Shown here one piece after another: positions 17,357-60,077 of a DNA stretch of 64,000 bases. The translations under genes and the position numbers were made by a program. The stretch lies in the IMG/VR virus record IMGVR_UViG_3300042465_005589, positions 186,001-250,000 of that record, one strand, 5' to 3'. The notes beneath the pieces were generated by a model. It was not told the origin of the DNA. It worked only from the letters and a program-made list of their open reading frames with translations, and made no database searches. Numbering within the stretch: the first letter of the stretch is position 1; each line of letters opens with the position of its first letter.

Positions 17357-17358
17357 AA

Positions 17359-33440: not shown

Positions 33441-34343
33441 ATGCCTTGTAGTTCTACATATTGCCTTTCAAACACTGGTTACCCAACATTCGACGATGTA
33501 TACTTTAGTGCCGGAACACATAATTCTCAACTATATTGGACCGGTCAAACTAATAGTTTATTTATCTATTATAATACCGGGTCAACCCAATGGTGTTTAT
33601 CAACCGTTTTAGATGGAGTTTGTTTATTATCAGGTCAATCACCTTGTTTTAACCCATGTCCGGATTTAGACGATGTTTATTTCTCTAGCGGAACATGTCC
33701 CACTCCGACCCCAACCCCAACAGCATATTGTTCTAGTTTAAATTTTTCAGCAATTTTTGATTGTGATGTTGACACACCAACTCCCACACCTACACCCACA
33801 TCCACTCCAACCTCAACGCCAACTCCAACCCCTACCAACCCATGTAATGTTGTTATAAGTGCAACAATTCAAAATATCCCAAATACTCCCACACCAACAC
33901 CAACATTAACACCTACACCTACTCCACCTGTTGCTCGTACTTGTACTTTTGAGGGAGCGGTAACTTTCAACACAATAGATGATAGTATTGTATGTCCGTA
34001 TAGTTATCAATTCCAAAGTTGTTATAATGGTATGATGTATTACACAACAAATCAAATTGTAACTCCAGGTAATATTCCAATTGAAAAGTTTCACGTTTAT
34101 CAAGCCAATGTTAATGGAATTGTTATGTGTGTTGGATATATTGGAGTTAATAATAACACTATTGGTAAAGACGATATTACACTATTATTAGGACCATACG
34201 GATTTTTAGATGATGGTGATTGTATATTATGTTCTCAATCAATAGTCCCTACACCAACACCAACACCGACACCAACAGAAACCATACTCCCATCAGAATG
34301 TACTGACTGTGGAATGGAAGGTTACTTATATAATAAAACTTAA
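33441..34343 (+). CDS. Cys-rich tail-associated protein with four Pro-Thr tracts
   Basis: PTPTPTPT linkers separating Cys-containing modules. Confidence 0.8.
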   Translation: MPCSSTYCLSNTGYPTFDDVYFSAGTHNSQLYWTGQTNSLFIYYNTGSTQWCLSTVLDGVCLLSGQSPCFNPCPDLDDVYFSSGTCPTPTPTPTAYCSSLNFSAIFDCDVDTPTPTPTPTSTPTSTPTPTPTNPCNVVISATIQNIPNTPTPTPTLTPTPTPPVARTCTFEGAVTFNTIDDSIVCPYSYQFQSCYNGMMYYTTNQIVTPGNIPIEKFHVYQANVNGIVMCVGYIGVNNNTIGKDDITLLLGPYGFLDDGDCILCSQSIVPTPTPTPTPTETILPSECTDCGMEGYLYNKT

Positions 34344-34353
34344 AAATTAAAAT

Positions 34354-36564
34354 ATGCCATTTTCAGCATCAACTTGTTTAACAAATTCAGGAACTGTCGC
34401 TTTAGGAGGGACATTTAACATATATTCAAATGTTGATGGATATACCACTCCTTTCCAAACTAACGTAAGTTATACTAGTTTATTTGGTCCGTTATGCCCA
34501 TATGTTATGGGTAATGTACCTAATGGGACTAATACAATTAGAATTATTGATATCACAACCACATGTTGTGCAACTATTGAATTACTATCTAATGATTTAT
34601 GTACAACTTGCGATTTATCATTTGATTCATATCAAACTAATAATGTTGGGATAATTGTTGCCGGAGAATTAACAGGTAGTTGTGAAAATGACATCACCGA
34701 TTATAGAATATTTTGGTATGGTCCAAATTCGTCAACTAATCTTGCATTTACATCAGGTTATGGAAGCTCCTTTGTACCATACAATTTAACACATCCATTA
34801 GTAGGAATTAACTCACCAATGGTTGAAGCCGGAACATATATTCCAGTTATTGATAAGGTAAAACTAAATGGTCTTAATTATTCTCAAACAGGTGGAACAG
34901 GTTATATTCAAGCAGAATTAGAATGTTTTAACGCGACAACAGTTAATGTCCAACCTTTTACTTGTGATAATGGAACAGTACCGTTACCGAACGATTATAC
35001 TCATAGGGTTAATTTTTCTGCAGCAGCCGCAGGTACCACTCCATTAACATTACAATCAACTTTTGATTTAGACATTACAACTAATTATTTTTCGTGGAAA
35101 TTTAAAGGGGATGCAATTCCGGATTTTCTTAAAATAACATTCTATGGTTCAGATTATTCCGACCCAATTATTTTAGAATATTGGGAAATTGGGGGAAACA
35201 TTTCAATTTCCAATGCGGAGTATTTGACATTTCCAAAATCCGCTAGCACCACAGATTATTTTTCAAAAGTAACCTCATTAACCTCATTATCAAGAAATGT
35301 TGGCGATTATCTAATTTTAGAAGTAATTCCAAACCAATTTAACTCACAAACAAATTGGGATTTTTATTTTACTTGTATGAATAGTTTTGATTGTGATTTA
35401 TGTTTATATGATTATTTAAATACACCATATAAAATAAAATCATCATCTATTACAGGTATTACGGGTTCGTGTTCTTCAATTGAGGTCAAATTTGATGTAT
35501 CCGGATGTACCGAAAGTTCAATAATAAATAGCGATATTTACAAATATCAAAAAACAGACGCAAATCCACTCTCAACAACAAGTTTTAATACTAATACATA
35601 TACAGATGATATCACGGGATTAAGAAATAGAACAACAGGTAGTTTGGATTGGGACGCAACATCCTGCAGTATGCTTTTTGGTATAAATGTTCCTCCAATT
35701 TGTTCACCTATACCTAACACAAACATAATATCTTTTAAAAAAGAAAATACCGGACCATCAGGACAAGGTGTAATTAAAATGGAATTTAGTAGTTTAAGTG
35801 ATTTAGTTGATTATAAATCGTCTTATGATTTGACATTACCTTATTCAGGAACACCATTTAATTCTGCCGACCCAAATTATTATAGATATTTTCAATTATT
35901 TATACCAAAAAACTTAACTCCAAATACTAATTGTGGTGATGGAACGTCTCTTTTAACGTATTATTTACATTATTCTAGTATAGTAACAACAGGAACTACC
36001 GGAGGAAATTATACTTTAAACATAACAATGCCAACAATATCTGACGATATCGCACCGTTTGACCCTTGTGACATAAATTGTCAATTAAATATTAATAGTG
36101 TTGTAACAACAGTTAATAATTCTTCAACAGGTGCAACAAATGTTGAGGATTTTACTTCTAACACCGGTTCTAAATACGTTGTACCTTTTGGAGTAACAAA
36201 ATATTTTGTTGAGTTTCCTCCTGTCACTAACAGTGCTAGTACTATTCAAGGAGTATATTATCTTAACAATTATCTTAATGCAACAGTACCTTTTTCAGGT
36301 AGTAGTTCTCCCTATACTCGAATACCTTCGTTATCCGCAGTAACTTGTAATAATTTCACATCTATTGGGGTATCATATACCCAAGTACAATTTGTATACA
36401 TATATAATTATAAAGTTGAATTGACCGACCAAAATAATTTTAAGTCTTTTAGAATTTTAGCAACACCTATAGTTAACGGAGCACCTAGTGGTATATTCAG
36501 TGATATCGTCGCAACGGTGGTTAATGGTTCATTAACGTACGCAAACCCATCATATACTTTTTAA
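34354..36564 (+). CDS. Large tail-associated structural protein
   Basis: 736 aa, S/T/N-rich, beta-type, many Cys; located in the tail cluster. Confidence 0.75.
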   Translation: MPFSASTCLTNSGTVALGGTFNIYSNVDGYTTPFQTNVSYTSLFGPLCPYVMGNVPNGTNTIRIIDITTTCCATIELLSNDLCTTCDLSFDSYQTNNVGIIVAGELTGSCENDITDYRIFWYGPNSSTNLAFTSGYGSSFVPYNLTHPLVGINSPMVEAGTYIPVIDKVKLNGLNYSQTGGTGYIQAELECFNATTVNVQPFTCDNGTVPLPNDYTHRVNFSAAAAGTTPLTLQSTFDLDITTNYFSWKFKGDAIPDFLKITFYGSDYSDPIILEYWEIGGNISISNAEYLTFPKSASTTDYFSKVTSLTSLSRNVGDYLILEVIPNQFNSQTNWDFYFTCMNSFDCDLCLYDYLNTPYKIKSSSITGITGSCSSIEVKFDVSGCTESSIINSDIYKYQKTDANPLSTTSFNTNTYTDDITGLRNRTTGSLDWDATSCSMLFGINVPPICSPIPNTNIISFKKENTGPSGQGVIKMEFSSLSDLVDYKSSYDLTLPYSGTPFNSADPNYYRYFQLFIPKNLTPNTNCGDGTSLLTYYLHYSSIVTTGTTGGNYTLNITMPTISDDIAPFDPCDINCQLNINSVVTTVNNSSTGATNVEDFTSNTGSKYVVPFGVTKYFVEFPPVTNSASTIQGVYYLNNYLNATVPFSGSSSPYTRIPSLSAVTCNNFTSIGVSYTQVQFVYIYNYKVELTDQNNFKSFRILATPIVNGAPSGIFSDIVATVVNGSLTYANPSYTF

Positions 36565-36567
36565 GAT

Positions 36568-36873
36568 ATGACAGCTATTAACATACAGTCAATCACAGGT
36601 TCAAATTTTCCATATACAATTTACGCTTGTGATGTCTATGGAAATCAATGTGCGTTAATCGCCACAATCGTAACATCTGTACCCCCTGACAATATTATTG
36701 TATTACCATCTCAATTTAATAGTGTAGCCGCTGTCGGTATTAAAGTTATTTATGGAGATGGTTGTGAAAGATTTGAAGTTGTACTTTGTAACTTATTACC
36801 TCCGGTACCAAAACAATTCCAAGATTATCAATATTTTGAATTTATGGATTTTGATATATACGATTTCCAATAA
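36568..36873 (+). CDS. Small structural protein (paralogue of 33224-33439)
   Basis: INIQSITG..FPYTIYACD...IKVIYGDGCE; C-terminal KQFQDYQYFEFMDFDIYDFQ. Confidence 0.75.
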   Translation: MTAINIQSITGSNFPYTIYACDVYGNQCALIATIVTSVPPDNIIVLPSQFNSVAAVGIKVIYGDGCERFEVVLCNLLPPVPKQFQDYQYFEFMDFDIYDFQ

Positions 36874-36904
36874 CAAACTATTTATATTATAAAACAAAAA
36901 ACCA

Positions 36905-39900
36905 ATGAGATTAACAGATAGAAATTTTCCACCTTACATATCACCAGACGCATTAGTTCACATTGTATTAACAGGTGATACGACAGATAGCCCTCAAGGT
37001 TCATCCTTTAAAGCTACGATTGGTTCATTAGATAATGCCGTAATCATAACAGGAACCGGAATTAATTCGTCAGTTAGAAAATCAGTAGGGAATATTGCAT
37101 CAGGCAATTATTCAGCTGTTTTAGGTGGACAAAATAATTCAGGGACAACATACTTTTCAACCGTAGTTGGGGGATTTTGTAATATATCATCAGGTTACAA
37201 CTCATTTATTGGTGGCGGTAAATACAATACCTCTTCTGATTATATTTCAACAATTGGTGGTGGTAAATGTAACATTGCCTCTGGTAATACATCAACAATT
37301 GGGGGTGGTAGTGGTAATTTTTCTTCTTATTGTCGTTCAACAGTTGGGGGAGGCTCATATAACACCGCTTCCGGTAAAGCATCAGTAGTTAGTGGTGGTC
37401 AATCTAACACTTCTTCCGGTTTTTATTCAACAATTGGTGGTGGTAGTGTTAACACAGCGAGTAGTATATCATCAACAGTTGGTGGGGGGCAATATAATAT
37501 TGCTTGTGGTCAATTTTCTACAATTGGAGGAGGGGGAGGTTCATATTCATTAATTAGTAATAAAGCGTACGGTATTGGTTCTACAGTCGCAGGTGGGATG
37601 AGTAATCAGTCATTAGGTAATTATAGTACAATTGCCGGAGGTGCTAGTAATTTTAGTCTTTCCGGTACATCTACAATTGGAGGAGGGAGTAACAACTGTT
37701 CTACAAATTGTGGTTCCACAATTGGAGGGGGTGGTTTTAATACAAGTTCAGGATGTTACTCAACAATTGGTGGTGGAAATAGTAATTTATCAAACGGTAA
37801 TTGTTCAACAGTTAGTGGTGGTCATTTTAACAAAATATGTCAATCTCAAAATTATAATAATAATTATTTTTGTTTAGGCGATGTTATTGGGGGAGGAAAT
37901 TGTAACACCATAAATACAAATACTTATGTTGGTTATACTTGCACCGGTGGTAACACAATTGGTGGTGGTTACACAAATATTATAACACCATACCTTAACT
38001 TTAACACGATTGGTGGTGGTCAAAAAAATAAATCTTACGGTAATAGTTCAACAATTGCCGGTGGACAGGAAAATATAACTTCCTTTGGTTGTTCAACAAT
38101 TGGTGGGGGAATTTTAAATGTTGCAACAGGAAATACATCAACTATTGCGGGTGGTTGTGGAAACCAAGCAATAAATAGTTTCTCAACAATTGGTGGTGGT
38201 ACAAATAATATATCATGTTTTCAATCATTTGTTGGTGGAGGTAGATGTAATAAATCTTTAGGTAGTTATTCCACAATATCAGGAGGTCAAAATAATTGTA
38301 ATGTTCTCAGCCATTCTGTTATTGGTGGAGGATTTAATAATAAAATAACTTGTACATATTCAACAATTGCTGGTGGTAGAAATAATTGTGTATGCGGAAC
38401 AGATTCTTCAATAGTTGGTGGTTCCGGTAATAGCATCAATAGTAATGTATTGAATCCATTTAGGTCAGTAATTGCCGGTGGTGTGAATAATAAATTATGT
38501 CAATCATACGGGTTTATTGGAGGTGGTAGAGGCAATCAAATATCAGGTACAACTGGTATTGGTGAAGATTCTGTTATTGTCGGTGGATTCTATAATAAAA
38601 CATATGGTGTTAGAGCAGCAATCTTAGGGGGAGCACTTAACTGTTTAGGTTCAAACACTTATGGTAGTGGTCTTGTAAGTGGTAATAATAATAGAATTTC
38701 TGTACCATTTGGTATAATTGGTGGAGGACAAGTTAATGTAATATGTGGTGACCACTCAATTATTGGTGGTGGTGCGTTAAACTTTATTGGTAATTCATCA
38801 GTAACAAACTCATATTACGCAAATAATTGTTCAATAACTTTATATGGTAATCAGACATCGTCATTTAATGTTAACGACCTTTTACTAACATGGGATTTTA
38901 GTTGTTCAAGAAATGTTGTTATAACTGCATCTACGTATTCGGGCGGATATACTTATTTGGATGTTAGTGGGTCAACAATATTTGTAAATCCATTCACATC
39001 GTCCGCTCCAATAATTAGAAATTTAACAGATAGTTTACCAGGATTCCAAAATAGTTTTATTGGTGGTGGTTACGCAAATACCGTATCCGGAATTACAGGG
39101 TTTATAGGTGGAGGAGGTTATAATAAAGTCTCAGGAAATGGAGGAGTTATTGGTGGTGGTCGTTGTAATATATCAAGTGGTAATCAATCATCGATAACCG
39201 GAGGATATGATAACAAATCTATTGGGTGTCAATCATCAATCGTTGGTGGTGGTCGTAATTGCTCTATTGGACATTGTTCCTTTATTGGAGCTGGTTCATT
39301 CAACACCACATGTAATTATCATTCAACACTTACCGGTGGTAAGTGCAATATATCATCAGGTAATTATTCATTTATTGGTGGTGGTTCTGGAAATACCGTT
39401 TCCGGTGGTGTGTCATTTATTGGTGGGGGTCAATTTAATAGCGTACAAGGAATTAAATCAACAATTGGTGGAGGATGTAATAATATAATCTTTACATCCG
39501 GTTCAACTATAGGTGGTGGTATTACTAACACAATTTGGTCGCCTAATTCAACAATTACCGGTGGTCTTTCAAATATTATTTGTGCTGCCGCTAGTGATTC
39601 CTTTATCGGTGGTGGTGGTTGTAACATTGCATATAGTGGTAACTCAACAATTAGCGGAGGTTTTCAGAACAAAACATGTAATTGGGTTGCAACAATTGGT
39701 GGAGGTTTTAAAAACACTGCGTCAGGTGGTTGTTCAACAATTGGAGGTGGTTATAATAACTGCTCAATTGGTGCTTGTTCATTTGTTGGGGGAGGTAGTC
39801 AACACAGTGTCGCAGGGTGTGGTTCATCAATAGTTGGTGGTTCACTTAATATAATTTCGGGGAACTGTTCAACAATTGGCGGAGGAAATGGAAATATAAT

Positions 39901-40795
39901 TTGCAGCAACATGTCAACAATTGGTGGTGGTTGTCAAAATACAACTTGTGTAAGGTTTTCATTTATAGGAGGTGGTTATAAAAACTGTATAATTTGTCAA
40001 ACAGCGTATGGATACTCAACAATTGTAGGTGGATGGACAAATAGAACTCACGGTGAATCTAACTTTATTGGTGGTGGTCAATTCAACTGCATTGGAACAC
40101 CTGCGTTATCAGGTTCATCATTCTTATCTGTAATTGTTGGTGGAAATACAAATGGTGTATGTGATACAGCTTCTTTTATTGGTGGTGGTGATGGAAATGT
40201 CGTATTTAGCGGTTCTTCGGCAATAGTTGGTGGAGCCAGTAATATTTCATGTGCTGAACATTCTTTTATTGGAGGTGGGTGTGCAAACACTGTCACAGGT
40301 TGTTATTCATCAATTCTTGGTGGAGCCTATGGATGTGCACCTCGTTTTGGACAAAGGTCATTTGCTTCAGGTACTTGGGCTGGCGCTGGTTCAAGAGGTG
40401 CGTCACAACAAATTGATTTAGTAGGTAGAAATAAAACAACAAGTGGAAGTGCTGTCAACATATTTTTAGATGGGGCAAGTCAACGTATATCCGTAATTGC
40501 AGGAACTGCAATGTTTGTTACAATAAATATTGGTGGTATTAAATCAGATGGTTCTGCAGGAGCTCACTATATAAGAAAAGTCGCAATTAAAAATGTAGGT
40601 GGTGCAACTTCTTTAATTGGTGCGAGTCCGGTATCAGTTATTGGAACTGATGTGGAAGATAACGCATCTTATGACGTTGCAATTAGTGCTGACAATACTA
40701 ACGATGCTTTAGATATACAAGTCACAGGAGCTGTTGGTGAAACTTTAAGATGGACTGTCCATATTGAAGGTGTAGAAATAGTTTACGGAATATAA
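36905..40795 (+). CDS. Gly/Cys-rich repetitive tail fibre (beta-solenoid adhesin-like)
   Basis: 15-aa repeat STIGGGxxNxASGxx over about 1000 aa; globular C-terminal domain; late motif at 36879-36886. Confidence 0.8.
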   Translation: MRLTDRNFPPYISPDALVHIVLTGDTTDSPQGSSFKATIGSLDNAVIITGTGINSSVRKSVGNIASGNYSAVLGGQNNSGTTYFSTVVGGFCNISSGYNSFIGGGKYNTSSDYISTIGGGKCNIASGNTSTIGGGSGNFSSYCRSTVGGGSYNTASGKASVVSGGQSNTSSGFYSTIGGGSVNTASSISSTVGGGQYNIACGQFSTIGGGGGSYSLISNKAYGIGSTVAGGMSNQSLGNYSTIAGGASNFSLSGTSTIGGGSNNCSTNCGSTIGGGGFNTSSGCYSTIGGGNSNLSNGNCSTVSGGHFNKICQSQNYNNNYFCLGDVIGGGNCNTINTNTYVGYTCTGGNTIGGGYTNIITPYLNFNTIGGGQKNKSYGNSSTIAGGQENITSFGCSTIGGGILNVATGNTSTIAGGCGNQAINSFSTIGGGTNNISCFQSFVGGGRCNKSLGSYSTISGGQNNCNVLSHSVIGGGFNNKITCTYSTIAGGRNNCVCGTDSSIVGGSGNSINSNVLNPFRSVIAGGVNNKLCQSYGFIGGGRGNQISGTTGIGEDSVIVGGFYNKTYGVRAAILGGALNCLGSNTYGSGLVSGNNNRISVPFGIIGGGQVNVICGDHSIIGGGALNFIGNSSVTNSYYANNCSITLYGNQTSSFNVNDLLLTWDFSCSRNVVITASTYSGGYTYLDVSGSTIFVNPFTSSAPIIRNLTDSLPGFQNSFIGGGYANTVSGITGFIGGGGYNKVSGNGGVIGGGRCNISSGNQSSITGGYDNKSIGCQSSIVGGGRNCSIGHCSFIGAGSFNTTCNYHSTLTGGKCNISSGNYSFIGGGSGNTVSGGVSFIGGGQFNSVQGIKSTIGGGCNNIIFTSGSTIGGGITNTIWSPNSTITGGLSNIICAAASDSFIGGGGCNIAYSGNSTISGGFQNKTCNWVATIGGGFKNTASGGCSTIGGGYNNCSIGACSFVGGGSQHSVAGCGSSIVGGSLNIISGNCSTIGGGNGNIICSNMSTIGGGCQNTTCVRFSFIGGGYKNCIICQTAYGYSTIVGGWTNRTHGESNFIGGGQFNCIGTPALSGSSFLSVIVGGNTNGVCDTASFIGGGDGNVVFSGSSAIVGGASNISCAEHSFIGGGCANTVTGCYSSILGGAYGCAPRFGQRSFASGTWAGAGSRGASQQIDLVGRNKTTSGSAVNIFLDGASQRISVIAGTAMFVTINIGGIKSDGSAGAHYIRKVAIKNVGGATSLIGASPVSVIGTDVEDNASYDVAISADNTNDALDIQVTGAVGETLRWTVHIEGVEIVYGI
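37080..40370. repeat. Degenerate 45-nt coding repeat array
   Basis: Recurrent tcaacaattggtggtgg core; about 65-70 units estimated from length; non-repeat insert at about 38790-39040. Confidence 0.9.
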
Positions 40796-40797
40796 AA

Positions 40798-40968
40798 TTA
40801 TTCCGTTTTTTTACCTAAACCCTCATATATCCTTAAAAGTTTTAAAGATTCATTGTAGTTTTTTTCTAATCTATCTAATTCTTTTTCGTTGACACCTTTT
40901 TCACATGCGTCCTCGTAAATTTTTTTAGATTCAGTTACCAAATTCGATATTGTTCTAATCAGTTTCAT
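40798..40968 (-). CDS. Small protein with putative head-targeting leader, 56 aa
   Basis: Manual translation MKLIRTISNLVTESKKIYEDACEKG...; TATTTATA at 40973-40980; missed by the ORF track. Confidence 0.7.
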   Translation of the reverse strand: MKLIRTISNLVTESKKIYEDACEKGVNEKELDRLEKNYNESLKLLRIYEGLGKKTE

Positions 40969-41046
40969 ATTATATAAATATCATCATCTTTACCATTTAT
41001 TACATTTGATTGTCATTTATATTTAATTAAAAACGTTTTATATAAT

Positions 41047-42027
41047 ATGATTTTTGTTACAGCACAACCTGATGTACCTTATTTCCATTGGCAAATAATG
41101 GTGTATATACACAACTTTATTGAACATGGTGTTCCTCCAAATCAAATCCACGTATTACTTGGAATAATAAATGAAGATGGTAAACCAACTGAAGAATCTT
41201 TAAAATTAAAAGATTCCGGAGTTAACGTACATTATTATATCGATAATAGACCTCAAAAACATTACATCCCAACAGTTAAACCCTTTTTAATTTCAAAATG
41301 GTTAAAAGATTTTCCTGAACATGGTAAATGTTTCTTCTTACATGACTCTGACATTATATTCAGAAAATTACCAAATTTTGATAGTTTATTAAATGATGAT
41401 ATTACATATTTATCCGACACAATAGGATATATTGGTTATAGATATATTATGGATTGTTGTGAACGTTATGAAAATGCTCACCCAACATCAGGTAAAGGTC
41501 AATTATTAGAAGAAATGACCGATGTTGTTGGCGTTTCAGTTGAGTGTATTGAATGTAATCAAGAAAATTCGGGAGGTGGTCAATACTTAATTAAAAACAC
41601 CGATTGGTTATTATGGGAAAAAATATACGCAGATTGCGTTCCACTGTATGACCAAATGTTAGACTATCAAAAAAGATTTCCAATTAGTCCAGGCGAAATT
41701 CAATTTTGGACCGCCGAGATGTGGTCACTATTATGGAATTTGTGGTTACATGGAATTGAGACAAAAATAACCCCTGAATTTGATTTTTCATGGGCAACAG
41801 ATTCAATAAAAATATATGAAGATAAACCTATTCTTCACATGGCAGGAGTAACAGATAATCAAAAACAAGATAAATTTTATAAAGGAGATTTTATTAATCT
41901 TAACCCATTAGACAAATTAAAAGAGAATATTAATTTTTTCGATTATGTCAGTTCTCAGAGTTCAACAAAAAAATATGTAGAAGTTATGAAATCTTTGGTG
42001 AAAAAACAAATAAAGGATTATTTATAG
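41047..42027 (+). CDS. GT-A glycosyltransferase resembling plant peptide O-glycosyltransferases SGT1 (GT96) / HPAT (GT95)
   Basis: YFHWQ, KPFLISKWL, LHDSDIIFR (DxD), GGGQYL, WTAEMW and ILHM occur in the same order as the motifs I recall for SGT1/HPAT. Confidence 0.7.
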   Translation: MIFVTAQPDVPYFHWQIMVYIHNFIEHGVPPNQIHVLLGIINEDGKPTEESLKLKDSGVNVHYYIDNRPQKHYIPTVKPFLISKWLKDFPEHGKCFFLHDSDIIFRKLPNFDSLLNDDITYLSDTIGYIGYRYIMDCCERYENAHPTSGKGQLLEEMTDVVGVSVECIECNQENSGGGQYLIKNTDWLLWEKIYADCVPLYDQMLDYQKRFPISPGEIQFWTAEMWSLLWNLWLHGIETKITPEFDFSWATDSIKIYEDKPILHMAGVTDNQKQDKFYKGDFINLNPLDKLKENINFFDYVSSQSSTKKYVEVMKSLVKKQIKDYL

Positions 42028-42047
42028 TATAACAGAAACAAATTATA

Positions 42048-44291
42048 ATGATATATTATTTTCAAACATGTTGTGTCAAATTTAACGAATCCGACAATTA
42101 TTTCGGAGTAAATGACATTACATTAATATTACCTATTTTAGGGGAAGTTTATTCTATTGAAACCCTTTCATTTAGTGGGTGCGCTTATTTAATATCAGGA
42201 CCAATCCCATCAGGGTCGTTAATTTACGCAGGGAATAAAACTATCTCAACATTATATAACGATTGTCAAGATTGTTTGGATAACGCTTATGGTTGTTTTC
42301 CTCCTCCTCCTCCACAGCCAGCAATTAGTTATATTCAATCCAATGAATGTGATGTAATTACATTATTTCCAATGACTGTTGAATGTGATGTTATTAATCC
42401 TTCAACTGCAGGTAGTCGTGATGGTAGAGCATCTATATCTATAACAGGAGGAACACCTCCATATACAGTTACTTGGGGTGATGGTAGTATTTCACCTGCT
42501 ATCATGGATTTACAATCGGGTTCATATCCAGCAACTATTGTTGATTATTATGGTGATTTTACCGCCAATACAATATGCGTATTAACAGGACCAACCGCAA
42601 CACCAACACCTACATTAACCAAAACCCCAACACTAACACCAACACCAACACTAACGGTTACACCAACATTAACTAGAACTCCAACACTAACACCTACATT
42701 AACTACAACACCTACGGTTACACCTACATTAACACCTACATTAACATCAGGAATACCACCAACACCAACAATTACCCAAACTATAACACCTACATTGACT
42801 ATAACACCTACATTAACCAAAACACCAACACCTACCCCAACACCAACAATAACAATAACACCAGAAGTACCATCATACAACGAAACATTCACAATGATTG
42901 CAAGAAGTTTGAATAGTTTTGCCCCTGTTAGTGGTTTTGAATTTAGAATTGACGCATCACTGCCATTTAGAATTGTTTGGGGTGATGGTAATACAGATAA
43001 TTACCCTTCAGGTATTAATTATATATCACACATATATTCAACACCTTATACTGGAAATATATTAATTCAAACATCAAATTTAACATCTATAACCCAAATT
43101 ATACCTAAAAATGTTAACCCTCAAATAAATGAGAATAGTGTTAGATATTTAGAAATTGAAACTTCTCAATTAAATCTTTTAGATGGGTTAGTTGGAATGG
43201 GTGACGGTAATGGACTAAATTATTTTTTATCAGGTGATATAAGTTTATTACCGACAACATTATTATCATTAATTTCACGGTGGTCTAATTGTTCAGGTAA
43301 TATTGCAAATTTACCACCTAATATACAATATTTTCATATTAATTTGTTCTTTAATAATTATCCAAACCAATTAAATACTATTTCAGGAAATGTTTCTAAT
43401 TTACCAACAACATTAAAAACTATTATTTTAGGTGGTATAAATACCATAACAGGTAATATAAATAATATTCCTTGCCCATCACTTGAAAAAATTATGATTG
43501 CTGGTTCAAACACTATTACCGGTGATATATCATTAATGTCGACACCTAATTTAGATACCATAAATATATATGGTAATAACACAATATTTGGTGATTTAGG
43601 CGGATTATCAAATAGTGTTATGGATATAAGATTGGCTGGTGGAAATACTGTTACTGGTGATATATCAACATTACCAACAAGTTTATCACACATTTATGTT
43701 GAAGGTACTAATACTCTTTATGGTAATATTAACACATTAAACTATTCAATATTATCAACTTTACAAATTTATGGAAATAATAATATTACTGGTAATATTA
43801 GTTCATTAAATTTAAAACTAGGAGCGATTTTTGAGTTAAAGGGTAACAATACATTAACTGGTAATATTGGTAGTATAGGTAGTACTTATAACTATAACCA
43901 ACTAGCTATATACGGTAACAACACAATTTATGGTAATATTCAAGATTTACCTTCTAATTCAAAAAATGTTAGAATACAAGGTAATAACGTCATTTCAGGT
44001 GATTTATCATTAGTTCATTTAAATATCCAATATTTATATATATACGGTAACAACACAATATCAGTATTCTCAAATAGTACAAGAATTTTTACAGATTTAA
44101 GAATAATTGAAATAGTGGGAAGCGGCTTTAATAGTACTAATGTTGATAAATTATTAACAAGTTATGCTAATTCAACTTGGGTTAGTAGTAAATTATTAAA
44201 AATAAAAGGCACATCATCACCTAAATACACAAACACTTCATCATACAACACACTTCAAACAACAAAAGGAGTGGGAATAACAATATCATAA
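42048..44291 (+). CDS. Modular tail appendage protein: Cys domain, SprB repeat, Pro-Thr linker, PKD-like domain, LRR solenoid
   Basis: DGRASISITGGTPPYTVTWGDG; about 90-aa TPT tract; IVWGDG..HIY; repeats IYGNNTITGNISSL; late motif at 42019-42026. Confidence 0.8.
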   Translation: MIYYFQTCCVKFNESDNYFGVNDITLILPILGEVYSIETLSFSGCAYLISGPIPSGSLIYAGNKTISTLYNDCQDCLDNAYGCFPPPPPQPAISYIQSNECDVITLFPMTVECDVINPSTAGSRDGRASISITGGTPPYTVTWGDGSISPAIMDLQSGSYPATIVDYYGDFTANTICVLTGPTATPTPTLTKTPTLTPTPTLTVTPTLTRTPTLTPTLTTTPTVTPTLTPTLTSGIPPTPTITQTITPTLTITPTLTKTPTPTPTPTITITPEVPSYNETFTMIARSLNSFAPVSGFEFRIDASLPFRIVWGDGNTDNYPSGINYISHIYSTPYTGNILIQTSNLTSITQIIPKNVNPQINENSVRYLEIETSQLNLLDGLVGMGDGNGLNYFLSGDISLLPTTLLSLISRWSNCSGNIANLPPNIQYFHINLFFNNYPNQLNTISGNVSNLPTTLKTIILGGINTITGNINNIPCPSLEKIMIAGSNTITGDISLMSTPNLDTINIYGNNTIFGDLGGLSNSVMDIRLAGGNTVTGDISTLPTSLSHIYVEGTNTLYGNINTLNYSILSTLQIYGNNNITGNISSLNLKLGAIFELKGNNTLTGNIGSIGSTYNYNQLAIYGNNTIYGNIQDLPSNSKNVRIQGNNVISGDLSLVHLNIQYLYIYGNNTISVFSNSTRIFTDLRIIEIVGSGFNSTNVDKLLTSYANSTWVSSKLLKIKGTSSPKYTNTSSYNTLQTTKGVGITIS

Positions 44292-44292
44292 A

Positions 44293-45318
44293 ATGGAATA
44301 TAATTTTTGTCTAAATATTAGTATTAATAACTTACAAATTCATTTTAACCCAAATGGATTAGATGTTAATGGATATAATCAATGGGTATCTGATGATTAC
44401 ACATATTCAATTAATTGGGACACCTCATTAAGTAGATGGAAATTGAATGGTGGTAATCTAACTTATTTGGTGTTTTCTTCTTTACCATCTTCTGTACCCC
44501 CTCTTAACTCTTGGTATGTATTAGGTGCTAACGGAACTGTTTATGCTAACGAAGGTGTTTGTAATCCATTAGGTATTAATTCATTAACCTATAGTGTTAA
44601 TCAACCAATATGTTCATGTGATGGTAATTTAATGGTAACTGTTTCAGGTGGTTACCCACCATATCAATATTCAATTGATAATGGTGTTACGTATTATAAT
44701 TCACCAATGTTTAGTCAATTATGTTCAGGAATTTATAGCGTTAAAGTTATTGATGTAAGTGGAAACACTAATAGTGATAATGTAACATTAAATGAACCTA
44801 CACCACCAACAGTTTATAGTGTAAAATTAACAACAACATCAACAAATCCGGTTAATAATAATACAACGTTGACTAATCAATATACAACAACGGTTAGTGT
44901 ATCACCTGAATTACCAAGTGGTACTGTAATCAATTTTAACATATCACACAATAACAAATTTTACTATTCTCCAAGTGGTATAACTGCAAGTTTGGTTACT
45001 AGTAGTGCCTTATATAAAAATGATAATTTAATACTAACCACATCAAACGGTACTGTAACATCAGATGCAAATTTTAATACAATTCAAGGATGTCAAAACT
45101 TAATAAAGTATTTAGATTTCTATACCGAAACTTGGAACTCATTAACCTTTACAAATTCAGATTCAATTGTTATTAACACGGTTACAACAATAACTAACAA
45201 TGGACCATTAACACCTTGTACGTATACATTAAGTGAGGACTTATATAATATATACAACGCAACTATAAGTGGTTGTGGATGTTGTGTAGTAGAAATTATT
45301 AACGTTAATCAAAAATAA
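44293..45318 (+). CDS. Tail-associated protein with an SprB-like repeat
   Basis: CSCDGNLMVTVSGGYPPYQYSIDNG...LCSGIYSVKVID; C-terminal CGCC. Confidence 0.78.
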   Translation: MEYNFCLNISINNLQIHFNPNGLDVNGYNQWVSDDYTYSINWDTSLSRWKLNGGNLTYLVFSSLPSSVPPLNSWYVLGANGTVYANEGVCNPLGINSLTYSVNQPICSCDGNLMVTVSGGYPPYQYSIDNGVTYYNSPMFSQLCSGIYSVKVIDVSGNTNSDNVTLNEPTPPTVYSVKLTTTSTNPVNNNTTLTNQYTTTVSVSPELPSGTVINFNISHNNKFYYSPSGITASLVTSSALYKNDNLILTTSNGTVTSDANFNTIQGCQNLIKYLDFYTETWNSLTFTNSDSIVINTVTTITNNGPLTPCTYTLSEDLYNIYNATISGCGCCVVEIINVNQK

Positions 45319-45343
45319 AAAAAAATAAGAATATTTATATCAC

Positions 45344-47809
45344 ATGGGATACATATTAAAAAATACACAAGGTTTACTTAGTACAAGACTAACTGATACC
45401 GGAAGACAAAAATTATCACAGGGTAGTTTTAATATCTCTTATTTTCAAGTAGGAGATAGTGAGGTTTCTTACAATACATTAACAGGAACGTCATACAACC
45501 AATTTACCACAAAAATTCTTGAACCAGCCTTTAACGCTCAAAATTCGACAGGAGCACCTGAATATAACAAACAAAACGTTAAATACCCATACTATATTGA
45601 TGGAATAACAGGTAACACTTATGGAATCCCATACATGGCGTCTATCCCTCAATCGGTATATAATAGAGCCGCAATGAGAGGATTTTTCACCGGAGACACA
45701 ACCGCAACAACTTTCACATGGAGCGCATTAACAAATAGCCAATATACAATTAATTCTAACTATCTCGTAGATATGTCTACATTAACGGGTGGTAGTGTTA
45801 TTCAATTAGTATATTCAGGGTGTAATTCAAATATTGTAAGATTACCATCTATTGGTGACTTTGTTACAATATATTATGATGGTCAAGGAGAATACAATTG
45901 TTATTGTGAACCAGGATTAACACCTACCCCAACCTATACCCCAACATCAACTTACCAAGTCACTAATACACCAACACCAACTCCAACACCAACATATACA
46001 GGATGTGAAACACCAACTCCAACACCAACCCCAACAATAAGTTGTTCTACAACACCTGTACCTACCCCAACACCACCAAATTGTGAGATGTCAATGAGTA
46101 GTTGTTATTCAATCTTAACTTATAAAATTGTAGATATTTGTAACGGTAACTATACATTAGATAGACCTACACCTGATTTTTCAAACTTTTCAAGTGGATG
46201 TTTTGCCAGAGTATTAGTATATCCGCCAAACATGACAACATTATATGACAGTATCACACCTAACTCACATTGGAATCAAAATGTTATTAATTTTGAATCT
46301 TTATGTAGTACAGATGAATCAGATGTTAAAATTTGGAATATGAACATTCCCTGGTCTGAAGACCCTGCCGGTTTATATAATTCAACATATAAAGGTTATC
46401 CTTACTTTGGTTCGGCGTCTTATATGGGTAGTAAAGAATACTTTGGATATATGTCCGATAGTGGTCAAACAGATACTGGAGTTGTTTATTACTATAACTC
46501 ATTTGACGAGACAGTAGTTGTTCAACCTAGTGAACAAAAATCTATAGCAATTATTCATTATACTAATCAAGCGATTGATTTCTTTTATGGTGAAAAATTC
46601 GCCTTTGAACCTTACGACCCGGCAAACCCTTCTGATACAACAGGAGAAGCCCGCAATTTTAGATTACACTTGCCGTGGTTAATGTGGCATAAAAATCCAA
46701 ATTGTTGTAAAGGTCAAACATTTTGGGTTGACCCACCAGGATTTGATGAATATCTATTATTCCAACCATATTACATTGAGTCAACTAAAAATAGTGATAT
46801 GAATACTCCCGGTATTAGATATTACCAACTATGGGACACTAATGCGAATGATAATGGATTACCAAGTAGAATCGGTAAAGTATTCCCTGATTCACAAATT
46901 ATTGTAATTGATGATGAAGAAATTATTGCCGCTATGTCTTACAAGTCAAATCGTAATTGGACATTACCGGCACCTAAGGTTTCATTAACAACACCAAATA
47001 CTTGTGTGGTTGAAAATAATCAACCTGTTGTAAAAGGTATTTTAAGTGCTAACACTGAATATATGTACGTTACTTACAGATTTAGTAATACCGATATTTT
47101 TACAAATTCATTACACTGTAATTATTATACTAAAATTCAAGGACCTAACATTGATTGTGGTTCAGTTGCGTCACAAAACGTTTCCATTAGATTTGGTGCG
47201 GAATTCCCTTGTTTAAATCAACCTGTTGTTATCCCAACAACTACAACAACAACTACAACAACCACAACATTATGTCCATCATGTGATATAATAACAGGGT
47301 TCTACGCAGACACATTACAAATTATTTGTCAAAAAGTTATTGGTACAAGTAGACCTGACCCAGCTGAATGGAAAATTATTGATTTTACCTCACAGATAAG
47401 CGCAACAACAATTAATGGATATCTAACCGTAGATAGTTTAACAGGAACCACATTTACAATCACTGAAGAAAACTACGCAGCCGCTGACGATTATGATTTA
47501 AACGATTTTATTCCATTAGTACCTAACGGAACAACAACACCTTCATTAAATTTTGGAGATGAATATTATTTCTATGGTTCATTAGAAACCGATATCCAAG
47601 CAACCATTTATGAAATGAAATATAAAATAAATCTTGGACAAGCCGAGTTTCAATCAACCTCAAACCCTACATGGACTAAGGGGACAAATTCATATATTAC
47701 AGAAATTGGTCTTTACGATTCTGATATGAACCTTATGATTGTATCAAAGCTACAATCCCCTGTATTAAGACAAGGTATTCAACAGTTTTTAGTTAAATTT
47801 GATTTCTAA
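45344..47809 (+). CDS. Tail-collar / baseplate fibre-attachment protein with Pro-Thr and poly-Thr inserts
   Basis: N-terminal LTDTGRQKL..GSFNISYFQVGDSEVSY; C-terminal YITEIGLYD..MIVSKLQSP; late motif at 45332-45339. Confidence 0.7.
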   Translation: MGYILKNTQGLLSTRLTDTGRQKLSQGSFNISYFQVGDSEVSYNTLTGTSYNQFTTKILEPAFNAQNSTGAPEYNKQNVKYPYYIDGITGNTYGIPYMASIPQSVYNRAAMRGFFTGDTTATTFTWSALTNSQYTINSNYLVDMSTLTGGSVIQLVYSGCNSNIVRLPSIGDFVTIYYDGQGEYNCYCEPGLTPTPTYTPTSTYQVTNTPTPTPTPTYTGCETPTPTPTPTISCSTTPVPTPTPPNCEMSMSSCYSILTYKIVDICNGNYTLDRPTPDFSNFSSGCFARVLVYPPNMTTLYDSITPNSHWNQNVINFESLCSTDESDVKIWNMNIPWSEDPAGLYNSTYKGYPYFGSASYMGSKEYFGYMSDSGQTDTGVVYYYNSFDETVVVQPSEQKSIAIIHYTNQAIDFFYGEKFAFEPYDPANPSDTTGEARNFRLHLPWLMWHKNPNCCKGQTFWVDPPGFDEYLLFQPYYIESTKNSDMNTPGIRYYQLWDTNANDNGLPSRIGKVFPDSQIIVIDDEEIIAAMSYKSNRNWTLPAPKVSLTTPNTCVVENNQPVVKGILSANTEYMYVTYRFSNTDIFTNSLHCNYYTKIQGPNIDCGSVASQNVSIRFGAEFPCLNQPVVIPTTTTTTTTTTTLCPSCDIITGFYADTLQIICQKVIGTSRPDPAEWKIIDFTSQISATTINGYLTVDSLTGTTFTITEENYAAADDYDLNDFIPLVPNGTTTPSLNFGDEYYFYGSLETDIQATIYEMKYKINLGQAEFQSTSNPTWTKGTNSYITEIGLYDSDMNLMIVSKLQSPVLRQGIQQFLVKFDF

Positions 47810-47815
47810 TAAAAT

Positions 47816-48415
47816 ATGAAAAAAACACTTAAAGAAAGTCCTAAAGTATTAGGACTTGATGTTTCAACTAAAACTATTGGTTGGGCATTATTTGATATAC
47901 AAAGTAGAGAATTACTCGAATTAACACATATATCTCCCGTACCAAAACCAAAAGAAGAAAACAAAATAAAAGAGTTACTTCTAAAAGGAGAAATTTTCAG
48001 AAGTAAACTTTTAGAATACAAAGATATGGGTATCACTAAAGTAATTATCGAGGAACCTTTATTAAACTCAAACAATGTTTATACAGTTCAAACGTTATTA
48101 AGATTCAACACTTTAATTACAAAAGAAATATATGACGTTTTAGGTGTAGTACCTGATTTCATATCAACATACAATTCTCGTAAGTTCGCCTTTCCGGAAT
48201 TAACTCAATTAAATGATAAAGGTAAATACGTACTATTTGGAGGTCTTCCTAAAGACATTGATAAGAAAATGATTATATGGGACCTAATTGCAAAAAGAGA
48301 ACCTCAAATCACTTGGTTATACACAAGAAACAATACCCTTAAAAAAGAAAACTTTGACCAAACAGATGCTTATTGTTGTGTTATAGGTCATATGAAACAA
48401 GAAAAAATATGGTAA
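47816..48415 (+). CDS. ruvC: RuvC-like Holliday junction resolvase
   Basis: VLGLDVSTKTIGWA, VIIEEP, DQTDA. Confidence 0.85.
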   Translation: MKKTLKESPKVLGLDVSTKTIGWALFDIQSRELLELTHISPVPKPKEENKIKELLLKGEIFRSKLLEYKDMGITKVIIEEPLLNSNNVYTVQTLLRFNTLITKEIYDVLGVVPDFISTYNSRKFAFPELTQLNDKGKYVLFGGLPKDIDKKMIIWDLIAKREPQITWLYTRNNTLKKENFDQTDAYCCVIGHMKQEKIW

Positions 48416-48449
48416 AATAAAAAACCCCTCTTAACGGAGGGGTTTTTTA
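48416..48449. terminator. Bidirectional terminator between the convergent blocks
   Basis: aaaacccctc ttaacg gaggggtttt. Confidence 0.85.
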
Positions 48450-51400
48450 TTATTGACATACTCCTGAATTTACATGAATTTCTAATGTTGATGTTGCTGC
48501 AACAGTAACATTATAAAATTGAACTTGATAATAACCGGGAGTTGTAATTGGGGCGATTTCACTCGCATAAAGTGAAGCATCCACATATAATAAAACACAT
48601 TGTGAGTTTGCCACACTAGATAAGAGTGTCACAGTTAAATTTTGATTAACTAACCCTAATTGAGCACCCAATAAAGGATTTGACACAGTTACTGGGAAAC
48701 TATATGAACTATCATATAGATAAAACGTCTGTGGTTGGATATTTGTAACTTGAGATTCTTCTTTTTGAATACTAACAAGGAAATTTCTTGGTTTTTCAAT
48801 ATTAATATCACTCTCACATTCTAGACAACAATCTTCAGATGAATAAATTGTATTACTAATTGTTGTGAAATAATTAGTATTATAAATCTGAACATTTAAT
48901 TGAGGTGGTAATGTTGGTTCTCCATTATAAATATTTTTTAATTTCCAACACGATACATCACCTCTAACGTCAGTAGAACTAAATCCATCACCAATTAATA
49001 AATTAGGTAATACTAATATAGGTTGTAATATATAATATGGCTCACCATCCTCTCCAAGAATACACGATGCGTATAAATACCACAATGGTAATGGTGTTGG
49101 TGTAACCGTTGGTGTAACAGTTATTGTTGGCGTAACAGTTATTGTTGGTGTAACAGTTGGGGTTGATGTAGGGGTTGGTGTTAATGTTAATGTTGGAGTT
49201 ATAGTTGGCGTTACAGTTATTGTTGGTGTTGGAGGTAATCCAGGTGTCCACGTCGGGGTTAATGTTGGTGTAACAGTTAATGTTGGTGTCACAGTTAATG
49301 TTGGAGTTATAGTTAAAGTTGGTGTTATAGTTATTGTTGGTGTTGGTGTAGGAGCTAAACCACAATATTGACATGAGATATTATACTCAATAAACACATT
49401 AACATTAACATCTGTTGCTACCAAATATTGTTCTTCACATTTTGCAATTATTTGAATCCCATTATTTAATGGGTCAATATTAACTTGAGCAACTTGGTCA
49501 AAACTTTCTAATAAAGCAACTAAAGCGTTAAAATATTCTTCATCAGTTGGATAATGGTTTAAAGCATAACTTGTATAAAATTCTGAAGTTTCTGTTACAC
49601 TACCAATAGTTGCAACAATATTAAAGATTGCTTGATTAAGTAAACAATTAGTATAACCGGAAGTTAAATCATAATAACCCTCATTTAACATTTCTTTTGG
49701 ACCTTTTTTAACTAATTCGTTAATATTTTCAAAATCACTATTACAAATATTAAACGTTTGAAATGATGATATTGAATCAAATCCATCAATTATCACTTGT
49801 CTAATTTTAACACATCCATCACTATCTGTCACTTGTAAACTATAAGTTCCAGCACTTAAGCTATTTAAATAATACCCTGTCTGCCCATTTACATTATTAC
49901 TCCATAATAAAGTAAAAGGTGGTGCACCATTTGTAATATATGCAGATACCGTACCATCATTACCATTATTGGCATCAGTACTAGATAATAAAAAATCAAC
50001 ATTTTCAGAGGTATCAATTACAAAATTAATAATTTGTGCACAACCCGGAACCGCATCATCAATTTCTGCTGCGTACACACCTGAAAATAAATTATTAAAT
50101 GTCGTTGCACTAGTTTGAATTATTTGTAATTCACTACCAATATTAACGGTATAAGGTGGTGTACCACCTGAAATACTAATCTCCACTGAACCATTTTGTA
50201 AATCACAAGTTGTACCTGTTGTACTCGCACTTAAAGTAAAAGGTGACGTAGATACTATTGTATATGAATTAGTATATACACAAGCACCATTATCAGATAT
50301 TGTTAAATCGTAAGTATCAGCCGCCAAATTAGTAAATTGCCAAACAGAAGAATTAGTTACTTGTGTTTGAGTGTCTCCATTTGAATTTACTAGTGTATAT
50401 GTGTAAGGAGATTGACCACCTAATAGAGTCATTTTTATTTTTCCATTATTTCCACAATCCGCATTAATTGTGTCAATAGTAATAATTGAAAACCCATTTG
50501 GCGTTAAGACCGATATTGACCCAACAACAGAACATAAAGCAGCATCAGTCACTTTTATAGAAAATAATCCTGAACCAATATTTTGAAAAGTTTGTGAAGA
50601 ACTAAATGAAACATTAATTTGACCTGTAGACGCAGAATAATAATATGGTCCTGTCCCTCCTGATATAGTTACCGTAACTTCACCATCAGATGAAAAACAA
50701 GACGGTGGTACGCTCGTTAAAATTGCCGCAACACCTAATGCCGGTACCAACCCTACTGTCGCACTTTGAGATAACGTACAATTAGTACTATCGGTTATAG
50801 TTACACTATACGTACCATTTGTTAACCCTGTAATAAAGTCAGTTGTTTCGTTATTTGACCATAAATAAGTAAACGGTGGGTTACCTGTTAAACCCGTCAC
50901 ATATATTTTACCAGATTCAACGCTATTACACCCCGAATCTTCAACAACATAAAAACCCCAAGTAAGAGATGATGACGATTTTATAATAATAGTTTCTGAC
51001 ATTCCTGTACAACCTCCACCATCATCGGCAACAACATAATAAATACCTGGCGATAACGCCGGTGGGGTTGTGAATGTATTATAACCCGTTGTAGCAGATG
51101 TTACAAACCCTGTTAATGTATTATATAAATAAAAATCAGCAGAACCATAGAAACTACTTGTTTGAGCCGTCAACGCCCCATTATTAAAACTACAGGTAGT
51201 ATTTTGTTGACCTATAATACTTACACATGTACCACTAGAAATATTAACATTTACCGGTAAGACATTTTGAGATGGTGATGAACAAGAATCGATAACATTA
51301 AAGGTATATGTACCCGCAGATAATGTTGTTGCGGTATATCCTGTCACACCAGAACCTAACGCTATTGTCCCTAAAGCGGGACTTATCCATTGTATAGTAT

Positions 51401-56210: not shown

Positions 56211-56235
56211 ATTGATAAATATCAATTTTATATTT

Positions 56236-60075: not shown

Positions 60076-60077
60076 AA

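What the first reader, a model, noticed from the sequence alone, without database searches (positions are those of the whole stretch)
33441..49350. Mucin/extensin-like Pro-Thr and poly-Thr linkers in four tail proteins
(PT)n or TPT(L/I)T tracts occur at about 33700-34280 (four tracts), 42590-42865, 45920-46080 and 49085-49350, with a run of 11 Thr at about 47236-47270. In cellulases and mucins such linkers are O-glycosylated, which stiffens them and protects them from proteases. Their concentration around a glycosyltransferase gene marks them as likely substrates. The repetitive DNA also allows length tuning.
Basis: partly seen in the sequence, partly recalled or inferred. Interest (0 to 1): 0.65.

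Follow-up and report, generated by a model that had tools for sequence, protein, structure and literature searches.

The report
Thr-rich tracts beside a phage glycosyltransferase
A freshwater jumbo phage links the modules of several large repeat proteins with Pro-Thr tracts and carries a glycogenin-like sugar-transferase gene; in many unrelated phages that gene sits next to capsid or tail proteins ending in threonine runs, so the threonine run, not the Pro-Thr linkers, is the likelier sugar-attachment site.

Summary
Four ORFs carry (PT)n or TPT(L/I)T tracts at the stated coordinates, and one also has a run of 11 Thr. The window is part of a 318-kb lake-water jumbo myophage.

- **Unrelated phages:** in 15 of 15 sampled phages with this gene, it lies within 1.7 kb of a protein carrying poly-Thr or Thr-repeat tails, in the head/tail module wherever the record is annotated. 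Nine of nine capsid or tail-tube homologues from phages without the gene lack that tail.
- **Jumbo-phage relatives:** the poly-Thr site of the 821-aa protein is present only where the gene is present (40/0/4/20). This rests on only about four evolutionary changes.
- **PT linkers:** they persist in complete relatives that lack the gene.

Virion O-glycosylation is plausible, but the acceptor best supported is poly-Thr. The PT tracts look like ordinary disordered linkers between modules whose length drifts between lineages. The label "tail proteins" is unverified. No glycan has been demonstrated.

The parts
33441..34343 (+). 300-aa Cys-rich protein with four short PT tracts (about 33699-33728, 33774-33842, 33885-33932, 34248-34283) between small conserved segments
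   Evidence: Homologues in L005/L006 keep the tracts in place but with different sequence and a 2-aa length difference. No Pfam or PHROG match.
36905..40795 (+). 1296-aa Gly-rich repeat protein without a PT tract. It belongs to the same variable cluster and lies directly upstream of the transferase.
   Evidence: Length varies in relatives: 689 aa, and over 1336 or 1491 aa in cut copies. No family match.
41047..42027 (+). 326-aa GT-A fold, glycogenin/GT8-like glycosyltransferase of phrog_4417. Proposed protein O-glycosyltransferase acting on poly-Thr blocks.
42048..44291 (+). 747-aa protein: N-terminal domain plus an SprB-like repeat, a 91-aa TPTLT-type linker (42591-42863), and a C-terminal leucine-rich-repeat-like domain
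   Evidence: In L005/L007 the homologue is 186 aa and stops exactly where the linker would begin.
44293..45318 (+). 341-aa SprB-repeat protein in the cluster. It has no PT tract.
   Evidence: Pfam SprB E 3e-5, below the curated cut-off.
45344..47809 (+). 821-aa conserved protein with a PT linker (45908-46081, aa 189-246)
   Evidence: The linker has pLDDT below 50. A PT linker is present in 119 of 121 homologues.
47237..47269 (+). T11 run (aa 632-642 of the 821-aa protein): the best-supported candidate glycosylation site in the window
   Evidence: Codons are ACA x8, ACT x2 and ACC x1. Homologues have one to six blocks of T4-T12 at this site, or none. Presence goes with the transferase in the locus.
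48450..51500 (-). 1016-aa SprB-repeat protein with a 92-aa TPT(L/I/V)T linker (49083-49358) between the repeat region and a C-terminal domain
   Evidence: Pfam SprB E 7.8e-15. Linker length differs in relatives, which are 996-1024 aa.

Best explanation
Two features are mixed in this finding.

1. **PT tracts.** The (PT)n and TPT(L/I)T tracts are disordered, extended linkers that join the folded modules of large, fast-evolving, repeat-bearing proteins (SprB/Ig-like, LRR-like). These are probably virion-surface or adhesin-like proteins of a lake-water jumbo myophage. Modules are gained, lost or swapped at these linkers, and linker length drifts between lineages. The linkers do not depend on the neighbouring enzyme.

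2. **Transferase and poly-Thr.** The 326-aa gene at 41047-42027 encodes a cytoplasmic, metal-dependent, retaining-type GT-A glycosyltransferase of the glycogenin/GT8 kind (phrog_4417). Its likely job is to put a sugar from a nucleotide sugar on the hydroxyl of threonines in poly-Thr blocks of virion proteins before or during assembly. Candidate acceptors are the T11 run at 47237-47269, the T-blocks in four further proteins of the genome (T5 to T7), and possibly the Thr/Ser tract of the tail sheath. The many other transferases of the genome could extend the glycan.

**Shown:** the tracts, the fold, the motifs, the synteny and the co-occurrence.
**Inferred:** that the acceptor is protein, that it is poly-Thr, the donor sugar, and any benefit such as protease protection, stiffening, solubility or surface masking.
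For: **Fold**
- AF2 model with pLDDT 93.
- More than 300 Foldseek hits, the listed top 50 all GT-A transferases.
- Invariant D100-x-D102 directly after a beta strand, and invariant H264.

**Synteny in unrelated phages**
- 15 phages were sampled, with hosts Enterococcus, Lactobacillus and relatives, Lactococcus, Staphylococcus, Clostridium, Arcanobacterium and Chryseobacterium.
- In the 11 loci whose records name structural genes the transferase lies in the head/tail module beside annotated or probable capsid or tail genes; 4 loci have no such annotation.
- 13 have T6-T12 blocks within 1.7 kb, 11 of them in the gene directly upstream.
- The two most divergent have Thr-repeat C-termini directly upstream instead.

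**Controls**
- 5 homologues of the phiFL1A major tail protein and 4 homologues of the 4995_1 major capsid protein come from phages without the family.
- Absence was checked on whole records (0/5 and 0/4), with a positive control of 5/5.
- All nine end without the poly-Thr tail.

**Jumbo-phage family**
- Counts are 40 loci with both poly-Thr site and transferase, 0 with poly-Thr only, 4 with transferase only and 20 with neither.
- Complete relatives G001 and G004 lack the gene and have no T6 or longer run, while this genome has four such proteins.
- Mixed Thr codons argue for selection on the residue rather than pure DNA slippage.

**PT tracts as linkers**
- pLDDT is below 50.
- A homologue is truncated exactly at the linker.
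- A PT linker is present in 119 of 121 homologues and in relatives that lack the transferase.
Against: - No glycan has been seen on any of these proteins. All evidence is by association.
- Pfam's GT8 model does not match the protein.
- In the jumbo family the correlation rests on only 4-5 state changes. Three to four independent pairs go the same way or show no change, and the sign test cannot reach significance.
- Four loci have the enzyme but no poly-Thr at this site.
- Absence of the gene from a 10-kb flank is not absence from the genome; that was checked only for five records, two of them complete.
- Known GT8 enzymes often act on lipo-oligosaccharide rather than on protein.
- The 15 phages were chosen by me from 77 records, not sampled exhaustively.
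Confidence: 0.55

Rival explanations
1. One reading: the PT linkers themselves, together with the T11 run, are O-glycosylated by the neighbouring transferase. This would stiffen them and protect them from proteases, as in cellulase linkers.
For: - Four of the nine tract-bearing proteins lie within 10 kb of the gene.
- PT tracts offer many exposed threonines in disordered segments.
- One relative (L057) has a PT/ST tract in place of the poly-Thr block and keeps the enzyme.
- The genome has many further transferases.
Against: - PT linkers occur in 18 related loci without the gene.
- They also occur in two complete genomes without it, with 12 and 8 PT proteins.
- One of those genomes, G004, also lacks any GT2 or GT1 Pfam match.
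- In the 15 unrelated phages the tracts next to the enzyme are poly-Thr or Thr repeats, never (PT)n.
Confidence: 0.17
2. There is no protein glycosylation. The enzyme modifies something else, such as host envelope polysaccharide, teichoic acid, lipo-oligosaccharide or phage DNA. Both PT and poly-Thr tracts are then plain flexible spacers.
For: - Many GT8 enzymes act on lipo-oligosaccharide; LgtC is among the structural matches.
- The window's cluster is flanked by DNA-metabolism genes: primase, exonuclease, SbcCD and a RuvC-like gene.
- Nothing here demonstrates a glycoprotein.
- The complex prediction gave no answer.
Against: - The gene sits in the head/tail module directly after the Thr-tailed capsid or tail gene in 11 of the 15 phages, and within 1.7 kb of a Thr-rich tract in all 15; some of them, by my own knowledge of their genera, are lytic.
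- The Thr tail is missing from 9 of 9 homologues in phages without the gene.
- Poly-Thr and the gene are lost together in the jumbo-phage family.
- A target other than protein would not predict these patterns.
Confidence: 0.2
3. The gene and the poly-Thr coding stretch travel together as one mobile cassette for reasons unrelated to catalysis. For example, the Thr run could be a docking or assembly tag for the protein rather than its substrate.
For: The gene looks like an insertion between conserved structural genes, for example between the major tail protein and the tail chaperones in phiFL1A.
Against: - The Thr tract is fused to non-homologous proteins: capsid, tail tube, portal, small decoration-like ORFs and an internal loop of the 821-aa protein.
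- That pattern fits a portable acceptor tag better than one cassette.
- The enzyme keeps its catalytic motifs.
Confidence: 0.06

Closest known systems
Mycobacteriophage virion glycosylation (Che8 and relatives; Freeman et al. 2023, Cell Host Microbe 31:1216, known to me only through citing papers PMC11256854 and PMC12691614)
   Same: Phage-encoded glycosyltransferases are thought to decorate major virion subunits in the cytoplasm and build a glycan coat.
   Different: - The enzyme family here is a glycogenin/GT8-like PHROG of unknown function.
- The proposed acceptor is a homopolymeric Thr block.
- The hosts differ: Bacillota, Bacteroidota, one actinomycete, and an uncultured lake jumbo phage.
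- Here it is only a prediction. I could not read the original paper.
Glycogenin and other GT8 retaining transferases (LgtC, the Skp1 alpha-galactosyltransferase, GlyE of the pneumococcal serine-rich-repeat protein pathway)
   Different: Sequence identity is only 8-13%. Pfam's Glyco_transf_8 model does not match. Donor, acceptor and stereochemistry are untested.
Pro-Thr linkers of cellulases and other modular secreted enzymes
   Same: (PT)n tracts lie between folded modules, are predicted disordered, and vary in length between homologues.
   Different: Those linkers are glycosylated during secretion by host machinery. Phage proteins fold in the cytoplasm, and here the PT tracts persist without the phage enzyme.
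Serine-rich-repeat adhesin glycosylation of Gram-positive bacteria (GtfA/B followed by GT8-type extenders)
   Same: Cytoplasmic O-glycosylation of long hydroxy-amino-acid repeats. GlyE is a structural match.
   Different: No GtfA/B-like initiating pair was sought or found. The tracts here are short Thr blocks on virion proteins, not kilodalton-scale Ser repeats on secreted adhesins.

Membership tests
phrog_4417 (phage protein family, function unknown) | Full-length match to the family HMM | tested here: met
   E 5.2e-69, residues 1-317 against profile positions 1-291 of 293.
GT-A fold glycosyltransferases | Single Rossmann-like alpha/beta/alpha domain superposable on solved GT-A enzymes | tested here: met
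GT-A fold glycosyltransferases | DxD metal/nucleotide-sugar motif at the end of a central beta strand | tested here: met
   D100 and D102 are invariant in 20 homologues and follow strand E95-99 of the model. Their equivalence to the catalytic DxD is inferred from position, not from a residue-level superposition.
CAZy GT8 / Pfam Glyco_transf_8 | Match to the family sequence model | tested here: not met
   No Pfam family at E 0.01 or better. PF01501 finds nothing in the whole genome, although it rings in 5 control genomes.
CAZy GT8 / Pfam Glyco_transf_8 | Third metal ligand His in a late strand, and retaining chemistry | tested here: inconclusive
   H264 is invariant in a short strand. No residue-level alignment or assay was available.
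Phage virion O-glycosylation system (mycobacteriophage type) | Phage-encoded transferase genetically linked to the modified virion subunits | tested here: met
   Synteny in 15 of 15 sampled phages. Controls 9 of 9. Co-occurrence in the jumbo family.
Phage virion O-glycosylation system (mycobacteriophage type) | Glycan covalently attached to virion proteins | not testable with these tools
   Needs glycan staining or mass spectrometry of particles.
   - No Pfam, PHROG or NCBIfam structural match.
- BFVD and the Atlas give only uncharacterised phage proteins.
- The one proven tail protein with a Thr tract is the sheath, outside the window.
Interdomain PT linkers | Low-complexity Pro/Thr segment between independently folding modules, tolerant of length change | tested here: met
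   pLDDT below 50 for residues 190-244. A homologue ends at the linker start. Linker lengths run from 44 to 426 aa in 121 homologues.
SprB repeat proteins | Pfam PF13573 above the curated cut-off | tested here: met
   The 1016-aa ORF scores 54.7 bits against a cut-off of 28. The 341-aa ORF scores only 24 bits.

The most novel reading that the evidence does not exclude
phrog_4417 defines a widespread and so far unrecognised virion O-glycosylation system in which a short poly-Thr block acts as a portable glycosylation tag. The tag is fused to capsid, tail-tube, sheath or fibre-like proteins in phages of Bacillota, Actinomycetota and Bacteroidota and in freshwater jumbo phages. Such a tag could be moved to other proteins.
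Probability: 0.45. Interest if true: 0.78.

Novelty: new variant of a known kind. Interest (0 to 1): 0.62.

Why it matters
Glycosylated phage particles are so far documented, in the literature I could reach, only for mycobacteriophages. If this reading holds, a protein family listed as "unknown function" in at least 77 sequenced phages would get a function. Several of those phages infect Enterococcus or Staphylococcus, groups used in therapy work, and others infect dairy Lactococcus and Lactobacillus.

Capsid and tail surfaces of those phages would then carry sugars. That bears on antibody recognition, clearance, stability and adsorption.

The prediction is simple and testable: a Thr run next to the gene is the acceptor. 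It can be checked in cultivated phages with a glycan stain and an intact-mass measurement. For the jumbo phage, it also separates a probable modification site (T11) from ordinary PT linkers.

Tried and rejected
- **Near-identical DNA in sequenced phages:** none found.
- **Sequence and profile search of the transferase against PDB, Pfam and NCBIfam:** nothing.
- **Structure of the 821-aa protein:** the model was poor (pLDDT 53). Fold searches in BFVD and PDB gave only an uncharacterised phage protein or matches with Z at or below 7.4, so no structural role could be assigned. The Atlas feature search returned unnamed viral clusters.
- **Pfam and PHROG scans of the neighbouring large ORFs (51500-63992):** nothing except an HNH endonuclease.
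- **Complex prediction of the transferase with residues 605-675 of the 821-aa protein:** no answer (score 0.01). This is not evidence either way.
- **Reads.** Only Logan contigs were available.
  - Contigs of four lake samples bridge the C tract and the T11 run without gaps.
  - The B tract is not bridged.
  - The tract regions collect pile-ups and false joints from other repeats.
  - Polymorphism within a population therefore could not be judged.
  - The stretch laid was 6000 letters.
- **Whole-record searches of ENA/JGI contigs:** I used IMG/VR loci instead.
- **Profile comparison of two ORFs near 296-297 kb with the transferase:** no relation.
- **Original mycobacteriophage paper:** not held.
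- **Not used:** the large representative-protein search, and any alternative genetic code.
Full report
**Source.** The window is bases 186001-250000 of a 318,164-bp IMG/VR virus record that CheckV rates complete. GC content is about 31%. Near-identical DNA occurs in at least 24 lake-water metagenome runs. The genome encodes a tail sheath (genome 281741-285127, phrog_23 E 2.5e-55, Pfam sheath domains), so it is a jumbo myophage. No sequenced phage is close at the DNA level. The host is unknown. SprB repeats, and the fact that the nearest isolate homologue of the transferase is in a Chryseobacterium phage, hint at Bacteroidota. That is only an inference.

**Observation.** Tracts of this kind occur in 9 of 422 ORFs, against a mean of 1.4 after shuffling residues within proteins. 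Four of the nine lie in the 16 kb of the finding. The others lie at genome 7.6-10.4 kb (two ORFs), 47.2 kb, the tail sheath, and 301.6-303.6 kb, which holds the largest tract. The tracts are real and non-random, and they are enriched here without being exclusive to this place.

**What the PT tracts are**
- In the 821-aa protein the PT segment (aa 190-244) and the T11 segment (aa 630-646) are the parts the AlphaFold model leaves below pLDDT 50, flanked by better-predicted sheets.
- In close relatives the tracts stay at the same positions but differ in sequence and length.
- In 121 homologues the first linker ranges from 44 to 426 residues, and 119 keep at least (PT)3.
- The 747-aa protein is only 186 aa in two relatives and ends exactly where the linker would start.
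- Some homologues of the 821-aa protein carry a whole beta-propeller-type domain inserted between Thr blocks.

The tracts therefore mark module boundaries in proteins that exchange modules. This fits fast-evolving surface or adhesin-like proteins. Their folded parts are SprB repeats (54.7 bits for the 1016-aa ORF) and a weak leucine-rich-repeat signal.

**The enzyme**
- ORF 41047-42027 has no Pfam, NCBIfam or PDB sequence match.
- It belongs to phrog_4417, annotated "unknown function" (E 5e-69).
- With 20 homologues it folds confidently (pLDDT 93, pTM 0.91).
- Foldseek returns more than 300 matches at E 0.001 or better; the listed top 50 are all GT-A glycosyltransferases.
- D100 and D102 are invariant and follow a central strand, and H264 is invariant. 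This is the GT8-like metal-site pattern by position, which is an inference.
- Pfam's GT8 model itself does not match.

I therefore call the protein GT8-like in fold, not a member of that sequence family.

**Test in unrelated phages.** tblastn finds the family in 77 sequenced phages. I fetched 15 from different genera.
- In the 11 loci whose records name structural genes, the gene lies in the head/tail module beside annotated or probable capsid or tail genes (a structural protein in LP65), usually directly after the major capsid or major tail protein. The Chryseobacterium, Staphylococcus DH5, Iacchus and ENFP1 loci carry no such annotation.
- In 13 of them, an ORF within 1.7 kb carries blocks of six to twelve threonines, mostly as a C-terminal tail. 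In 11 this is the gene directly upstream.
- The two most divergent members (Levilactobacillus ENFP1 and Lactobacillus LP65) have Thr-rich short repeats at the C-termini of the upstream ORFs instead.
- The carriers of the tail are not homologous to each other. They include capsid, tail tube, portal and small ORFs.

**Controls.** Five homologues of the phiFL1A major tail protein and four homologues of the Enterococcus 4995_1 major capsid protein come from phages whose whole records lack the family. The absence searches gave 0/5 and 0/4, and the same search found 5/5 known carriers. All nine end without the Thr tail, stopping where the carriers' tails begin.

**Test within the jumbo-phage family.** Eighty IMG/VR loci encode the 821-aa protein. 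Among the 64 with at least 6 kb upstream:

| | Transferase in locus | No transferase in locus |
|---|---|---|
| Thr block at the T11 site | 40 | 0 |
| No Thr block at the T11 site | 4 | 20 |

The raw Fisher p is 5e-13. This is not independent evidence 64 times over. On a tree built without the tract columns, the two traits change only four and five times. The three to four independent pairs go the same way or show no change, never the opposite way, and no sign test can be significant with so few.

Two complete relatives (322 kb and 257 kb) have no homologue of the enzyme anywhere. They keep 12 and 8 PT-tract proteins but have no run of six or more threonines, whereas this genome has four proteins with T6 to T11. 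The 257-kb relative also has no Pfam GT2 or GT1 match. PT linkers are present with or without the enzyme (44 against 18 loci).

**Other context in this genome**
- There are at least four GT2 genes, a GT1 domain in a 1456-aa ORF at 306 kb, and a GT25-family gene at 298.5-300 kb.
- Two genes downstream of the GT25 gene lies a 281-aa protein with three blocks of six, six and seven threonines.
- The tail sheath carries a 36-residue Thr/Ser tract in its insertion region.
- The T11 run uses three different Thr codons, so the residue is maintained, not merely a slipped DNA repeat.

**Mechanism proposed.** During late infection the GT8-like enzyme, in the cytoplasm, transfers a sugar from a nucleotide sugar to threonine hydroxyls in exposed poly-Thr blocks of virion proteins. 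Other phage transferases may extend the glycan. The PT tracts act as extended spacers between modules, whether or not they are modified. Possible benefits are protease resistance, stiffness, solubility and surface masking, all of them speculative.

The fold, motifs, synteny and co-occurrence are shown. The acceptor, donor and effect are inferred.

**Literature.** Full-text searches for phage virion, capsid or tail glycosylation, for threonine-rich tracts and for poly-threonine found only the mycobacteriophage case and reviews that cite it. The original paper is not held. I found no description of this family or of poly-Thr tails as acceptors. The library is incomplete, so this is not proof of novelty.

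**Limits**
- There is no biochemical evidence.
- My sample of 15 carriers and 9 controls was hand-picked.
- The jumbo-family correlation rests on few events.
- The read-laying result used contigs only and says little about polymorphism.
- The complex prediction gave no answer.

Noticed in passing
window 42048-44291; L005:11002-11562 and L007:2494-3054: The 747-aa protein exists in close relatives as a 186-aa form that ends exactly at the start of the PT linker. The whole LRR-like C-terminal module is therefore gained or lost at the linker.
   Followed up: partly
window 36905-40795: A 1296-aa protein is made almost entirely of Gly-rich repeats of about 14-15 residues, with no family match. Its length differs widely in relatives (689 aa to over 1491 aa).
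   Followed up: no
homologues P0144, P0201, P0215, P0231 of window 45344-47809: Some homologues carry a large inserted domain (Pfam PF25174, PF21783 or PF10282, beta-propeller type) at the poly-Thr site, flanked on both sides by Thr blocks. The site looks like a display loop.
   Followed up: partly
G000 genome 281741-285127 (outside the window): The tail sheath protein (1128 aa) has a 36-residue Thr/Ser tract at aa 304-339 in its extra N-terminal region.
   Followed up: partly
G000 genome 295650-300000 (L157): A 281-aa protein with three Thr blocks (T6, T6, T7) lies two genes downstream of a GT25-family transferase gene. The two ORFs between them have DxD-like motifs but no family match. With the 657-aa PT protein at 301.6 kb and a GT1 domain at 306.3 kb, this looks like a second glycosylation island.
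   Followed up: partly
G000 genome 18.0, 27.8, 89.7 and 170.0 kb: There are at least four GT2-family glycosyltransferase genes elsewhere in the phage genome, an unusually rich set.
   Followed up: no
window 47816-48415: A 199-aa RuvC-like resolvase gene (phrog_159, E 1e-4) sits inside the cluster of repeat proteins and is conserved there in relatives.
   Followed up: no
window 47200-47399: In four lake metagenomes, contig depth summed over the (ACA)n stretch reaches 3,000-23,000 in three of them against 10-100 beside it. Very many other sequences in these lakes therefore carry poly-Thr-coding repeats.
   Followed up: no
window 22528-22684: A tandem array of 30- and 42-nt units (up to 97% matches) lies in the minus-strand ORF 22386-23213. 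It is unrelated to the PT tracts.
   Followed up: no
window 55428-56225: An HNH endonuclease gene (phrog_8446, E 1.5e-6) is inserted among the large unannotated minus-strand ORFs.
   Followed up: no
window 33441-36564: The 300-aa and 736-aa proteins share an N-terminal motif (MP-x-S-x(3)-C-L-x-N-x-G) and are very Cys-rich. Several proteins of the cluster start with Cys-containing N-termini.
   Followed up: no
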